Shown: positions 48,649 through 62,026 of the stretch, in pieces
How the letters are laid out: every line of letters begins with the position of its first letter
Numbering within the stretch: position 1 is the stretch's first letter
Assembly (NCBI RefSeq): GCF_037042905.1
Contig: NC_087246.1
Location: 2,728,001 to 2,792,000 of the forward strand
From: Lytechinus pictus
Lineage: Eukaryota
Reading direction: 5' to 3'
Length of the DNA: 64,000 bases
Program-made: the position numbers and the translations under genes
Notes under the pieces: generated by a model
Database searches by the model: none
Told to the model about the DNA's origin: nothing
Seen by the model: the letters and a program-made list of their open reading frames with translations, nothing else

Positions 48649-48822
48649 TTAGGTTACCCAGACATCTTTTTGATACCTATGATTCTCTTCCATGGTTCTA
48701 AGATATTTTAATGCATCATCTTCTGACATGGATCCTTTGTCCTTGATGATTGTTAGCAAGGCCTCATGAACATCCGAAGCCATATGCGTGGCGTCACCAC
48801 AAACGTACATATGTGCTCCTCC
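48649..48822 (-). CDS. Diflavin reductase terminal exon
   Basis: [26 protein letters not shown]...[9 protein letters not shown]-stop. Confidence 0.92.
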   Translation of the reverse strand, partial: [57 protein letters not shown]

Positions 48823-60800: not shown

Positions 60801-62026
60801 CAATAGATTATTAAATCTCAAAGTGTGATTATAAAATAGATAATATTTTTAGATCAATTGCAATTTGAATGTAATTGAAAACCATTTGGAATATGGGGCC
60901 CAGGTTTCCCAGGCTTAATCAACTTTAATACCCAGTTCAAAGCTTCAAACTCAGAAGGAAATTTGAAAGCTTATCAATCACCAAATCTCCATACTCTTTA
61001 CATATAAAAACCAAGAACATGTACATAGCTCTAGAATGTTGCTTTCCACCATAGAATGGAATACTATTTGTTGGTGAAAAGTTAAACATTTTACTTGTAG
61101 AGTTTTCCATCAAAAACCTGTGATATTCTTCTGATCACTATATCTCTCAAGGTAACAGCTTTAACCACAGAGTCTCATTTAATATTTTATCATTATCTTC
61201 CATCTTATGGCTGCAGTTGGTCAATTGAAGCAAAACATGTATGCATGTATATAGTTCTATTGTTAAAGCTTATTACCATCTCCACTGGTTGAGATGATGA
61301 CCAAGATGAGTTGTTCATCTTCTAGCCTGAGATGCTTCCAATCTTTGGCATTTAAAAGCCTAGGCTGCAGTTGACAGAGACCAACGTCATCAGCAGATGC
61401 AGCAATATTTATAAGCCTGCTCAAGAAACATCATACATCCAATGTTTATTATTGATTCATTTGTTAAACTACTCCTTTATTATTTTCCAGATTCATTAGC
61501 TATTTTTATTTTTCATTCACTGATTGTATAACTTATGGATTTAATCAGATTCAAACCTTCTCTTTTCATATCAAATCTACACAATACATTCTTCAAAAGC
61601 TTATTTCATCATTAATTCACAAATTTATTTTTCTCATGTAAACCTGTAGGAGAACATCAAATATTGTTGTAACAGGTATGCATGCTCTGTATAGCCCACC
61701 CACCATTTCTGGAACAACAGTCCTAAACAGTTAAGATGATGACACAGCGAACACTTTGCTCCGCTGGGCCTATACCCATGCAGTCAATAAGAGAAAGTTT
61801 TCTCTAAAAATCTCAAATCCATCCCTGAAGGTCAAGACATGACACCCAAAAAAAAACACAGAAAATATCTCATTTAAAACTTACCTTTTAAAGAGAATAT
61901 TAGCAACTTCTTCACTGAAACCATATTCTGTACCATAGAAAACAAGAATCTGTTTTCCTGCAGCGCAGTGTGGATGCTGTCTTCCATTGTTGGTGTCACA
62001 ATCATGAATGTCATCTTCTTCTTGAC
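48649..62026 (-). CDS. Diflavin NADPH oxidoreductase (flavodoxin, FAD-binding and NADPH-binding domains), CysJ/sulfite-reductase-flavoprotein-like; 5'-incomplete, 11 exons in window
   Basis: complement(join(48649-48822,51711-51832,52375-52458,53549-53783,54404-54562,55382-55518,58724-58940,59646-59853,60390-60534,61277-61416,61885-62026)); all GT-AG and phase-consistent, no internal stops seen; [90 protein letters not shown]. Confidence 0.92.
49265..51151 (-). mobile_element. Young 5'-truncated CR1/Jockey-group LINE with uninterrupted RT ORF, in the last intron of the reductase
   Basis: About 600 codons without a stop: KAPGPDGI, NYRPVSLTS, QHGFRKGHSCETQL, DFSKAFDTVPH, SGVPQGTVLGP, LFADD; short 3' UTR and (GAA)n tail; flanked by identical 71-bp repeats 49194-49264 and 51152-51222. 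Confidence 0.93.
51711..51832 (-). CDS. Diflavin reductase exon (NADPH-binding)
   Basis: [40 protein letters not shown]. Confidence 0.92.
52375..52458 (-). CDS. Diflavin reductase exon (NADPH-binding)
   Basis: HLGASGMNLLYFGCRHNAKDFLYKKEL. Confidence 0.9.
53372..53530. mobile_element. Short palindromic MITE (PIF/Harbinger-like) close to a reductase splice donor
   Basis: GGGCCCCGTTGCATTAAAG ... CTTTTATGCGAAGGGGCCC; internal arms AACTTTGCCATCCAATGGTAACT / AGTTACCATTGGATGACAAAGTT. Confidence 0.7.
53549..53783 (-). CDS. Diflavin reductase exon (FAD/NADPH-binding)
   Basis: DSNRICVTAAIIRY...[11 protein letters not shown]...[31 protein letters not shown]. Confidence 0.92.
54404..54562 (-). CDS. 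Diflavin reductase exon (FAD-binding RxYS motif)
   Basis: TSRSNQALSGYMEVAEVGDVLEDYP...[17 protein letters not shown]. Confidence 0.9.
55382..55518 (-). CDS. Diflavin reductase exon (connecting domain)
   Basis: SNVTLRESLQNYYDLKNIRVSLLQCLL...ILMKNG. Confidence 0.88.
56093..58627 (+). mobile_element. Decayed Academ DNA transposon (transposase plus XPG-like domain remnants)
   Basis: Termini TAGACAGG / CCTGTCTA with degenerate subterminal inverted similarity (TGTTAATGCTGA, GTGCTGA); broken frames TTVGYLPIIQ, ALYPKLIELKW, GQHMQDSGL, HRLTYQALW, RMLPFLMFDHTHHAR, FVVKESKRKFYQVDP..SQEWLNGTG, WSSFLSLCENKANL, LVLHA..AAHDT; family recognised from memory of motifs; right end may extend to 58645. Confidence 0.7.
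58724..58940 (-). CDS. Diflavin reductase exon (FAD-binding)
   Basis: [42 protein letters not shown]...YQPK. Confidence 0.9.
59088..59270. repeat. 37-bp minisatellite, about 5 copies
   Basis: Unit GNTAACTTTGCCATTATTGYGTCCTTTATTGTCTTAT; follows a MITE-like end CTGGAGCCCATTTCATAAAG at 59056. Confidence 0.85.
59273..59400 (+). mobile_element. SINE core fragment
   Basis: CCTTTGGCAAGGCGTCAATCCACA...CAGGTCTTGAATAGGTACCAGTAGGA, homologous to the core of the SINE at 39490-39754. Confidence 0.55.
59646..59853 (-). CDS. Diflavin reductase exon (flavodoxin end and hinge)
   Basis: FCELGACPFIPIANVDMEDWTVINDWMDN...GFHRLKPFMATLL. Confidence 0.9.
60390..60534 (-). CDS. Diflavin reductase exon (flavodoxin domain)
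   Basis: [47 protein letters not shown]. Confidence 0.9.
60568..60750 (+). repeat. Interspersed ~70-bp unit plus GACG/GACA/GATA microsatellite, copy 2
   Basis: Near-identical to 42541-42610. Confidence 0.8.
61277..61416 (-). CDS. Diflavin reductase exon (flavodoxin domain)
   Basis: LINIAASADDVGLCQLQPRLLNAKDWKHLRLEDEQLILVIISTSGD. Confidence 0.88.
61885..62026 (-). CDS. Diflavin reductase exon (first in window)
   Basis: TGATAG acceptor; QEEDDIHDC...[29 protein letters not shown] donor. Confidence 0.85.

What the first reader, a model, noticed from the sequence alone, without database searches (positions are those of the whole stretch)
48649..62026. Intron-rich animal gene encoding a CysJ-like diflavin reductase outside the standard POR/NDOR1/MTRR/NOS set
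Several assembled motifs match my recollection of E. coli CysJ closely: [97 protein letters not shown] and RYQKDVW. The connecting domain is also short, as in CysJ. Established: animals lack the assimilatory sulfite reductase haemoprotein CysI, so the electron acceptor here is unknown. At least 11 canonical introns argue against bacterial contamination. The gene may be an old eukaryotic lineage lost in vertebrates (possibly related to Dictyostelium RedA, from memory) or an old horizontal transfer. The first in-window exon starts with an acidic linker (QEEDDIHDCD) after a phase-1 acceptor, so an extra N-terminal domain probably lies beyond the window.
Basis: partly seen in the sequence, partly recalled or inferred. 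Interest (0 to 1): 0.7.

Follow-up and report, generated by a model that had tools for sequence, protein, structure and literature searches.

The report
Sea urchin RedA-type diflavin reductase gene
This is an intact, spliced sea-urchin gene for a membrane-anchored NADPH flavin reductase of the Dictyostelium RedA family, a sixth diflavin reductase that many invertebrates keep and vertebrates appear to lack; public databases already annotate it, but nobody has studied what it does in animals.

Summary
A 12-exon gene lies on the minus strand. Eleven exons are at window 48649-62026. Exon 1 lies 16-154 bases beyond the window end. All 11 introns are GT-AG.

The 633-aa product is 99.7% identical to RefSeq 'NADPH oxidoreductase A-like [Lytechinus pictus]', so the gene is already annotated. 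Its layout is an N-terminal membrane helix, a disordered acidic linker, then FMN, FAD and NADPH domains.

The same genome carries POR, NDOR1, MTRR and two NOS genes at other loci. It has no CysI-type (NIR_SIR) domain.

In the trees the protein sits in:
- an animal clade (100/99): echinoderms, hemichordates, amphioxus, molluscs, an annelid, with a sponge as sister;
- inside a eukaryotic clade (100/98) that holds Dictyostelium RedA itself;
- apart from bacterial CysJ (100/99) and from POR+NOS+NDOR1 (98/95).

All 11 intron positions and phases are shared with amphioxus and oyster. dN/dS is 0.16-0.25. This is an old, vertically inherited, selected gene.

It fails the CysJ equivalog cut-off (449 against 668 bits). 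The 'extra N-terminal domain' is only a roughly 46-aa membrane-anchor exon; an ERK-type kinase gene follows upstream.

The likely role, inferred only, is a second CPR-like microsomal electron donor. Low novelty, moderate curiosity.

The parts
62027..64000 (-). In-window part of intron 1 (1,989 nt in all). Exon 1 lies just outside the window, at window-equivalent 64016-64154 (L009:16-154). It encodes the start codon and the membrane anchor, and ends in a phase-1 GTAAGT donor. A second in-frame ATG lies 15 nt upstream, at 64169.
   Evidence: Exon 1 matches the N-termini of the S. purpuratus and L. pictus RefSeq proteins. The intron is full of high-copy repeats.
61885..62026 (-). Exon 2 (aa 47-93): acidic linker and start of the FMN domain, including the TEYGFS phosphate loop
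   Evidence: The joint to exon 3 is seen in RNA.
61277..61416 (-). Exon 3 (aa 94-140), FMN domain
   Evidence: RNA coverage and the intron 2 joint (skips 468 nt, GT..AG on the minus strand) are.
60390..60534 (-). Exon 4 (aa 141-188), FMN domain (GDGVPP, LGDxNYxxFC)
59646..59853 (-). Exon 5 (aa 189-258), end of the FMN domain and the hinge
58724..58940 (-). Exon 6 (aa 259-330), start of the FAD-binding domain. It corresponds to two exons in amphioxus and oyster.
55382..55518 (-). Exon 7 (aa 331-376), connecting domain
54404..54562 (-). Exon 8 (aa 377-429), FAD motif RYYSISSSP
53549..53783 (-). Exon 9 (aa 430-507), end of the FAD domain and the NADPH motif [12 protein letters not shown]
52375..52458 (-). 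Exon 10 (aa 508-535), NADPH domain
51711..51832 (-). Exon 11 (aa 536-576), NADPH domain
48649..48822 (-). Exon 12 (aa 577-633 plus the TAA stop): the CGD motif and the conserved C-terminus RYQKDVWVT
49346..51208 (-). Open 620-aa reverse-transcriptase ORF of a retrotransposon inside intron 11. It is a passenger and not part of the gene product.
   Evidence: ORF; RVT_1, 126 bits
48252..48321 (-). Alternative terminal exon used by the RefSeq model on this very contig (XP_063963312.1, 652 aa). It is reached from a donor inside exon 12 (exon ends at 48677). It replaces the last 8 residues, including the invariant Asp and Trp.
   Evidence: Neither the donor nor the acceptor is conserved in L. variegatus. 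Usage was not measured.

Best explanation
This is the Lytechinus (sea urchin) orthologue of the eukaryotic RedA family ('NADPH oxidoreductase A'). It is a single-copy, 12-exon gene for a 633-aa diflavin reductase tethered to a membrane by one N-terminal helix. The catalytic part is on the far side of a roughly 40-residue disordered acidic linker.

Shown here: the gene structure, the intact ORF, the three cofactor domains with their binding motifs, the membrane helix, and the family placement. The eukaryotic clade contains Dictyostelium RedA. It stands next to bacterial CysJ in the tree, without being shown to be its closest relative, and apart from POR, NOS and NDOR1. Also shown are inheritance at least since the last common ancestor of sponges and bilaterians, purifying selection and low-level expression.

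Inferred from what is established for this enzyme class: NADPH gives a hydride to FAD, and electrons pass one at a time through FMN to an acceptor.

Inferred with less certainty (about even odds): the acceptor is a membrane-bound haem or iron enzyme such as cytochromes P450, cytochrome b5 or haem oxygenase. On this reading the protein acts as a second, CPR-like microsomal reductase beside the canonical POR. It is not a sulfite reductase subunit.
For: - Gene model and identity. The model is 99.7% identical to RefSeq 'NADPH oxidoreductase A-like [L. pictus]'. A member of that cluster is annotated on a contig of 70,580,802 bases, the length of this window's contig.
- Domains: Flavodoxin_1, FAD_binding_1 and NAD_binding_1.
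- Motifs: RYYS, GPGTGxAPF, CGD and the C-terminal DVW are invariant or nearly so across 58 eukaryotic members.
- Membrane anchor: the only strongly hydrophobic 19-mer is at residues 2-20. AlphaFold gives a helix at 2-29, a disordered stretch at 30-66 and a confident diflavin fold (pLDDT 88.9). The best fold matches are CysJ, then plant and human CPR.
- Trees: animals 100/99, eukaryotic RedA clade 100/98, bacterial CysJ 100/99, own POR+NOS+NDOR1 on the other side at 98/95. A sponge is sister to the bilaterians, and D. discoideum RedA lies inside the eukaryotic clade.
- Standard set elsewhere in the genome: POR, MTRR, two NOS, NDOR1.
- Antiquity: 11 of 11 intron positions and phases are shared with amphioxus and oyster. 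Urchin orthologues also have 12 exons, and dN/dS is 0.245 and 0.160.
- Expression: the intron 2 joint and minus-strand-consistent reads are seen.
- CPR-like traits: the anchor and the C-terminal Trp plus one or two residues resemble CPR and differ from the terminal Tyr of all 26 bacterial CysJ sequences. Dictyostelium RedA was described as a P450 oxidoreductase with an N-terminal anchor, and its loss stops development (PMC2257935). Language-model features place it nearest CPR clusters.
Against: - No enzymatic or localisation data exist for any animal member, and no paper in the searched library mentions 'NADPH oxidoreductase A-like'.
- The P450-donor role of RedA in Dictyostelium is itself inferred from homology and a mutant phenotype, not from a reconstituted assay.
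- The FMN phosphate loop is unusual: T-E-Y-G-F-S here, against S-Q-T-G-T-x in CysJ and in this genome's own POR. Ordinary FMN binding is therefore assumed, not shown.
- Expression in the two RNA runs laid is very low, and the exon 1-exon 2 joint was not captured.
- The RefSeq model on this assembly ends in a different last exon that lacks the catalytic Asp and Trp.
- The MTRR branch is long and unresolved in the trees.
Confidence: 0.8

Rival explanations
1. It is a true CysJ: the flavoprotein subunit of an assimilatory sulfite reductase, working with a haemoprotein partner.
For: Its best solved relative by sequence and by fold E-value is E. coli CysJ. Its best NCBIfam model is TIGR01931 cysJ. 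Several residues of the CysI-binding pocket (H258, T404, F496, Y498 in E. coli numbering) are retained.
Against: It scores 449 bits against an equivalog cut-off of 668, and the first 46 profile positions (the octamerisation region) are unmatched and replaced by a membrane helix. No NIR_SIR (CysI) domain is found in the 812-Mb genome, while the control rings in 11 of 14 reference genomes. It lies outside the bacterial CysJ clade. It has a C-terminal Trp plus extension where all 26 CysJ sequences end in Tyr. The retained pocket residues are conserved in both clades, so they do not discriminate.
Confidence: 0.03
2. It is bacterial contamination or a recent horizontal transfer into the urchin lineage.
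For: It is 38-40% identical to bacterial CysJ over about 89% of its length.
Against: It has eleven spliceosomal introns, all at positions and phases shared with amphioxus and oyster. It sits on a 70.6-Mb contig between an ERK-type kinase gene and a GDPD-domain gene, and the GDPD neighbour is also found in S. purpuratus. Retrotransposons lie in its introns. The animal clade follows the species tree and includes a sponge. A much older transfer from bacteria into an early eukaryote is not excluded by these data.
Confidence: 0.01
3. It is a divergent copy of POR, NDOR1, MTRR or the NOS reductase domain.
For: It has the same three-domain architecture. It shares the membrane anchor and C-terminal Trp with POR. 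Rat and human CPR score only about 30 bits below CysJ.
Against: All five standard genes are present at other loci and identified individually. The protein lies in a 100/98 clade that excludes them, with POR+NOS+NDOR1 across a 98/95 branch. Intron positions checked against POR, MTRR and NDOR1 are not shared.
Confidence: 0.02
4. It is a decaying or functionless relic.
For: RNA depth is very low. The RefSeq model on this assembly uses a species-specific last splice that removes the catalytic Asp and Trp. The family is missing from many animal lineages in the hit list.
Against: The ORF is intact and all cofactor motifs are conserved. dN/dS is 0.16-0.25 against two other urchins. Exon structure is conserved across phyla. 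The canonical C-terminus is encoded in frame, and more words of the 3' region are held in run contigs than the alternatively spliced form could supply (weak, because the runs' RNA status is a guess).
Confidence: 0.04

Closest known systems
Dictyostelium discoideum RedA (NADPH oxidoreductase A, REDA_DICDI, Q54B10)
   Same: It falls in the same well-supported eukaryotic clade. It is about 38% identical to a member of RedA's 90% cluster, P0207. It has the same layout: an N-terminal hydrophobic anchor, FMN, FAD and NADPH domains, and the C-terminal R-Y-x-x-D-V-W motif (PMC2257935).
   Different: The Dictyostelium gene has no introns (PMC2257935), while the urchin gene has 11. RedA has a known mutant phenotype (mound arrest, yellow pigment); nothing is known for any animal member. 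The animal proteins end in W plus two residues (mostly VT); Dictyostelium ends in WF.
Bacterial assimilatory sulfite reductase flavoprotein CysJ (SiRFP; PDB 6EFV, 9C91)
   Same: It is the nearest solved relative by sequence (288 bits in one unbroken stretch) and by fold E-value. FMN-domain motifs such as S-T-x-G-D-G-x-P-P and L-G-D-x-x-Y-x-x-F-C are closer to CysJ than to POR.
   Different: There is no octamerisation region; a membrane helix takes its place. It is below the TIGR01931 cut-off. There is no CysI in the genome. It has a terminal Trp plus extension where CysJ has a terminal Tyr. Its FMN loop is TEYGFS where CysJ has SQTG(T/N)A. It forms a separate clade.
Microsomal NADPH-cytochrome P450 reductase (POR/CPR)
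   Same: It has an N-terminal membrane anchor followed by a flexible linker, the same three domains, a C-terminal D-V-W, and TM-scores of 0.73-0.78 to closed CPR structures. It most probably works the same way.
   Different: It is not a member: this genome's POR is at C2:20.01 Mb and lies across a 98/95 branch. The connecting region is about 18 aa shorter. The checked intron positions differ.

Membership tests
RedA-type eukaryotic membrane-anchored diflavin reductases | Groups with Dictyostelium RedA to the exclusion of CysJ, POR, NOS and NDOR1 | tested here: met
   The eukaryotic clade has 100/98 support. REDA_DICDI is in the cluster of P0207 and lies inside that clade.
RedA-type eukaryotic membrane-anchored diflavin reductases | N-terminal hydrophobic anchor of about 20-25 residues | tested here: met
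   The hydropathy maximum of 2.08 is at residues 2-20, and it is the only such segment. Most eukaryotic members share it and no bacterial CysJ does. AlphaFold gives a helix at 2-29. PMC2257935 describes the same for RedA.
RedA-type eukaryotic membrane-anchored diflavin reductases | C-terminal R-Y-x-x-D-V/T-W motif | tested here: met
   The protein ends RYQKDVWVT. Trp is present in 58 of 58 eukaryotic members.
RedA-type eukaryotic membrane-anchored diflavin reductases | NADPH-dependent electron transfer to P450s or other acceptors | not testable with these tools
   This needs recombinant protein. It has also not been shown biochemically for RedA in the paper read.
CysJ (assimilatory sulfite reductase flavoprotein) | Score at or above the NCBIfam TIGR01931 equivalog cut-off | tested here: not met
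   It scores 449.1 bits against a cut-off of 668.15. A bacterial member (P0247) scores 636.6.
CysJ (assimilatory sulfite reductase flavoprotein) | N-terminal octamerisation region | tested here: not met
   Profile positions 1-46 are unmatched. The N-terminus is instead a membrane helix plus an acidic linker.
CysJ (assimilatory sulfite reductase flavoprotein) | Siroheme haemoprotein partner CysI encoded in the genome | tested here: not met
   PF01077 has no match in G000, while the control rings in 11 of 14 reference genomes. Caveat: a six-frame, exon-by-exon search can miss short exons.
CysJ (assimilatory sulfite reductase flavoprotein) | CysI-binding pocket residues (E. coli H258, F496, Y498, V500 and others; PMC11947256) | tested here: inconclusive
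   H, F and Y are kept in both the bacterial and the eukaryotic clade. V500 varies even among bacteria. The residues therefore do not discriminate.
POR / CPR | Orthology with animal POR | tested here: not met
   This genome's POR is at C2:20.012-20.032 Mb; one exon scores 105 bits to human CPR. It lies on the other side of a 98/95 branch.
NDOR1, MTRR, NOS reductase domains | Orthology with any of these | tested here: not met
   They are separate loci. MTRR is on C3:47.05 Mb. NDOR1 is on C15:14.79 Mb, where the only PDB hit is 4H2D. Two NOS genes have NO_synthase exons directly upstream. The MTRR branch is long and its exact place is unresolved.

The most novel reading that the evidence does not exclude
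Animal RedA-type reductases may not be spare copies of POR. They may instead serve a dedicated acceptor that has not yet been identified, such as a particular P450 clan or a non-P450 membrane oxidoreductase. On this reading the family-wide changes on the FMN domain tune the redox potential or the docking surface for that partner. Those changes are T-E-Y-G-F-S in the phosphate loop and G-D-G-V-P-P where CysJ and POR carry an acidic residue. Reductase and partner would then have been lost together in vertebrates, arthropods and nematodes.
Probability: 0.2. Interest if true: 0.55.

Novelty: already known. Interest (0 to 1): 0.3.

Why it matters
Textbook accounts give animals four kinds of diflavin reductase: POR, NDOR1, MTRR and NOS. 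This locus is a clean example of a fifth kind. It is old (present in sponges, ambulacrarians, amphioxus, molluscs and annelids) and under purifying selection. It was not among the best database hits from vertebrates, arthropods, nematodes or cnidarians.

Databases already name it after Dictyostelium RedA, so the gene is not a discovery. No animal member has been studied, however, and the electron acceptor is unknown. Lytechinus pictus is a laboratory sea urchin, which makes it a practical system for asking what a second membrane-bound NADPH reductase is for. The answer bears on how invertebrate P450 and sterol or xenobiotic chemistry is supplied with electrons.

Tried and rejected
1. A large N-terminal fusion, such as the PFOR domain of pyruvate:NADP+ oxidoreductase. 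I read 40 kb upstream. There is only a 139-nt anchor exon, and then an ERK-type MAP kinase gene whose last exon is about 8 kb upstream, so there is no such domain.

2. A Rosetta-stone search for family members fused to an acceptor domain. Nine long relatives of 710-2062 aa were scanned with Pfam. They carry only the three reductase domains. The single exception has a glycosyltransferase 'Branch' domain far downstream in a 2062-aa prediction, which is more likely two genes merged. This gave no clue to the acceptor.

3. CysI-interface residues as a discriminator. They are conserved in both clades, so they are uninformative.

4. Shared introns with POR, MTRR or NDOR1 as a sign of common eukaryotic ancestry. 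The sites I compared (after FIQER, around YVCG|D, in the GDG loop) are not shared. I did not map the paralogues' exons precisely, so this is a weak negative.

5. RNA support for exon 1 and intron 1. The bin holding exon 1 has a mean depth of 0.72 in one run, and no joint reached the reporting threshold. Exon 1 therefore rests on orthologue N-termini, the phase-1 GTAAGT donor and RefSeq models.

6. Literature on the animal family. There were no papers for 'NADPH oxidoreductase A-like' and none combining diflavin, NDOR1, MTRR, CysJ and phylogeny terms. The library is not complete.

7. The GC-AG alternative for intron 6 scored 3 points higher in the guide alignment. I rejected it in favour of the canonical GT-AG pair with a polypyrimidine tract, which reproduces the RefSeq protein.
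Full report
**What is in the sequence**

The minus strand of window 48649-62026 holds eleven open stretches. Together they read as a flavodoxin domain, an FAD-binding domain and an NAD(P)H-binding domain.

I located the window at G000:C2:2728001-2792000, on a 70.6-Mb contig of an 812-Mb assembly, and fetched 40 kb upstream. 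A profile-free search with exon 9 found a 636-aa protein at 85% identity. NCBI names it 'NADPH oxidoreductase A-like [Strongylocentrotus purpuratus]'.

With that protein as guide, tblastn found twelve collinear exons covering residues 1-636. Splice-site refinement gave eleven GT-AG introns.

The coding exons, minus strand, are:

| Exon | Coordinates |
|---|---|
| 1 | 64154-64016 (outside the window; L009:16-154) |
| 2 | 62026-61885 |
| 3 | 61416-61277 |
| 4 | 60534-60390 |
| 5 | 59853-59646 |
| 6 | 58940-58724 |
| 7 | 55518-55382 |
| 8 | 54562-54404 |
| 9 | 53783-53549 |
| 10 | 52458-52375 |
| 11 | 51832-51711 |
| 12 | 48822-48652, then TAA |

The spliced ORF is 633 aa, or 638 aa from an in-frame ATG 15 nt further up. 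It is 99.7% identical to RefSeq XP_054749534.1, 'NADPH oxidoreductase A-like [Lytechinus pictus]'.

Another member of that cluster, XP_063963312.1, is recorded on a contig of exactly 70,580,802 bases, the length of this window's contig. The organism is therefore Lytechinus pictus, and the gene is already annotated on this assembly.

**The N-terminus**

What lies there is one 139-nt exon. It encodes a start codon, a strongly hydrophobic stretch (residues 2-20, the only such segment in the protein) and a short polar tail. It ends in a phase-1 GTAAGT donor that fits the phase-1 acceptor at 62026.

The N-termini of the S. purpuratus, Diadema, Saccoglossus, amphioxus and oyster proteins begin in the same way. 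Upstream, on the same strand, come the exons of an ERK-type MAP kinase. Its last exon is at L009:8031-8180, so there is no room for another domain.

AlphaFold2, run with a 42-sequence alignment, gives:
- a helix at 2-29;
- a disordered stretch at 30-66;
- a confident diflavin reductase body (mean pLDDT 88.9, pTM 0.80).

**Expression**

Two stranded RNA-seq runs of the same species label, and two sets of run contigs, were laid on window-equivalent 61001-66000.

- Exons 2 and 3 are covered at low depth, with first mates on the plus strand. In most stranded libraries that means an RNA of the minus strand.
- The intron 2 joint (skips 468 nt, GT..AG on the minus strand) is seen in one contig and in three reads, though these three begin at a single place and may be copies of one molecule.
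- The bin holding exon 1 has a mean depth of only 0.72 in one run, and the intron 1 joint did not reach the reporting threshold.

Expression in these samples is low. Exon 1 rests on comparative evidence and RefSeq models.

**Which family**

Against solved structures by sequence, the ranking is:

| Relative | Bits |
|---|---|
| E. coli CysJ (one unbroken stretch) | 288 |
| Rat and human CPR (two stretches) | about 255 |
| P450 BM3 | about 198 |
| NOS | 175-188 |
| MTRR | 123 |

Foldseek ranks CysJ first by E-value, and closed CPR structures give the best TM-scores (0.73-0.78).

The protein nevertheless fails NCBI's CysJ equivalog model: 449 bits against a cut-off of 668, with the first 46 profile positions unmatched.

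The same genome has five other loci with the FAD_binding_1 domain. I identified them one by one:

| Locus | Gene | Evidence |
|---|---|---|
| C2:20.01 Mb | POR | one exon scores 105 bits to human CPR |
| C3:47.05 Mb | MTRR | |
| C2:5.60 Mb and C2:6.21 Mb | NOS (two genes) | NO_synthase exons directly upstream |
| C15:14.79 Mb | NDOR1 | the only PDB hit is the NDOR1 FMN domain 4H2D |

The gene under study is single-copy. No NIR_SIR domain, the CysI haemoprotein fold, is found anywhere in the genome, while the control rings in 11 of 14 reference genomes.

**Trees**

I built partial protein rows for the five paralogues from their HMM-matched exons. I aligned them with the model, E. coli CysJ and named or unnamed relatives.

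The careful tree (48 rows, LG+C20, ultrafast bootstrap/SH-aLRT) gives:
- an animal clade of 13 rows at 100/99, with urchins, a hemichordate, amphioxus, an annelid and molluscs arranged much as in the species tree;
- a eukaryotic clade of 29 rows at 100/98 that adds amoebozoans (Balamuthia, Dictyostelium), a red alga (Galdieria), a green alga (Ostreobium) and other protists;
- a bacterial CysJ clade at 100/99;
- POR+NOS+NDOR1 on the far side of a 98/95 branch.

MTRR is a long, unresolved branch. The 89-row quick tree agrees.

The Dictyostelium row belongs to the 90% cluster of REDA_DICDI. D. discoideum RedA itself, when added, sits in the same place. A sponge protein (Ephydatia) joins the animal clade as sister to the bilaterians, with support of 97 and 98.

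It is not met.

**Age and selection**

I reconstructed the exact exon structures of the amphioxus and oyster orthologues from their loci.

- All eleven urchin introns fall at the same alignment position and phase as introns of both species, within a few gapped columns for introns 1, 6 and 7. Those two species have one further intron, which urchins lack.
- L. variegatus and S. purpuratus also have twelve coding exons. dN/dS against them is 0.245 and 0.160.
- A GDPD-domain gene lies downstream on the opposite strand, both here (an exon at about 41208-41474) and in S. purpuratus.

This is an old, vertically inherited, constrained gene. Contamination and recent transfer are excluded. A very old transfer from bacteria into an early eukaryote is neither shown nor excluded.

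The best 120 database hits include no vertebrate, arthropod, nematode, tunicate or cnidarian protein, although they reach down to bacterial CysJ at 363 bits. This points to loss in those lineages. The caveat is that only the 8000 candidates sharing most words were scored.

**What distinguishes the family**

Across 58 eukaryotic members and 26 bacterial CysJ sequences:

| Feature | Eukaryotic RedA-type | Bacterial CysJ |
|---|---|---|
| N-terminal hydrophobic anchor | present in most | absent |
| C-terminus | D-V-W plus one or two residues (Trp in 58/58) | D-V-Y as the last residue (26/26) |
| FMN phosphate loop | T-E-Y-G-F-S (Tyr in 56/58) | S-Q-T-G-T/N-A (own POR: S-Q-T-G-T-G) |
| Loop after S-T-x | G-D-G-V-P-P | G-D-G-E/D-P-P |
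| FAD motif | R-Y-Y-S | R-L-Y-S |

The FAD, NADPH and catalytic Cys-Gly-Asp motifs are intact.

The connecting region is intermediate in length. It is about 15 aa longer than CysJ and about 18 aa shorter than CPR over the matched stretches, so 'short as in CysJ' is only half right.

**How it most likely works**

The electron path is inferred from the established chemistry of diflavin reductases and the intact motifs. NADPH reduces FAD, with the C-terminal Trp stacking on the flavin as in CPR. FAD passes electrons to FMN. The FMN domain swings on its hinge to reduce an acceptor.

The membrane helix, followed by basic residues and a flexible acidic linker, puts the catalytic body at a membrane surface, as in CPR. 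Dictyostelium RedA was described as a P450 oxidoreductase with the same anchor and C-terminal motif. Its disruption arrests development at the mound stage with a yellow pigment (PMC2257935). That paper gives no reconstituted assay.

I therefore hold that the urchin protein is a second, CPR-like membrane reductase. I am confident about the class and give about even odds that the acceptors are P450s, b5 or haem oxygenase. A sulfite reductase role is very unlikely: there is no CysI and no octamerisation region, and the protein carries a membrane anchor instead.

**A wrinkle in the annotation**

The RefSeq model on this contig (XP_063963312.1, 652 aa) matches my model up to residue 625 (its own residue 630). 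It then splices from a donor inside exon 12 (exon ends at 48677) to an exon at 48321-48255. That replaces the last eight residues, including the invariant Asp and Trp.

In L. variegatus the donor GT reads AT and the acceptor AG is absent. This end is therefore specific to L. pictus and not conserved.

Run contigs hold 66-81% of the sampled words of 48000-48900. The alternatively spliced form could supply at most about 61% (my arithmetic), which hints that the read-through form exists. The RNA status of those runs is only a guess, and my single read-laying run was already used.

**Verdict**

The finding is not new, because public annotation already carries this gene under the RedA-derived name. 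What remains open, and mildly interesting, is the function of this reductase lineage in animals.

Noticed in passing
window 48252-48321 and 48675-48677 (minus strand): The RefSeq model on this contig (XP_063963312.1) uses an alternative last splice that swaps the conserved C-terminus for 22 unrelated residues. That removes the invariant Asp and Trp. The donor arises from an AGG (Arg) codon that reads AGA in L. variegatus, where the acceptor is also missing.
   Followed up: partly
window 49346-51208 (minus strand), inside intron 11: An uninterrupted 620-aa ORF with a reverse-transcriptase domain (RVT_1, 126 bits). It is a retrotransposon in the same orientation as the host gene. More RT fragments lie at 29046-37442.
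   Followed up: partly
L009:8031-9734, L010, L011 (G000:C2:2800031-2822000, minus strand): The upstream neighbour is an ERK-type MAP kinase gene. Its exons carry motifs such as DFGLAR..TEYVATRWYRAPE and HRDLKPSNLL.
   Followed up: no
window 41208-41474 (plus strand); L029:13573-14237: A GDPD-like exon (LELD..T.D..VV.HD) lies downstream in convergent orientation. The S. purpuratus orthologue has a GDPD-domain gene in the same relative place, so local synteny is kept.
   Followed up: partly
model residues 79-84 and 139-144 (window exons 2 and 4): Family-wide signatures on the FMN domain: T-E-Y-G-F-S where other diflavin reductases have S-Q-T-G-T-x, and G-D-G-V-P-P where others carry an acidic residue. 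They are conserved from amoebae to urchins. Their effect on FMN binding or partner docking is unknown.
   Followed up: partly
window 62300-62400 and L023:1170-3006, 4343-4676 (intron 1 and upstream): High-copy repeats. A roughly 100-nt element at 62300-62400 has more than 50 copies at 83-97% identity across the genome, and RNA-run depth over intron 1 reaches hundreds to thousands.
   Followed up: partly
window 48556-48597 and 46122-46254: A (TA)n microsatellite of about 40 nt lies in the 3' untranslated region just after the stop codon. A 133-base run of N (an assembly gap or masked stretch) was left untouched.
   Followed up: no
L026:13749-16117 (amphioxus locus): In Branchiostoma floridae the gene next to the orthologue, on the opposite strand, encodes a FAD_binding_3-type flavin monooxygenase. 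Nothing similar was seen beside the urchin genes, so this is probably coincidence.
   Followed up: no
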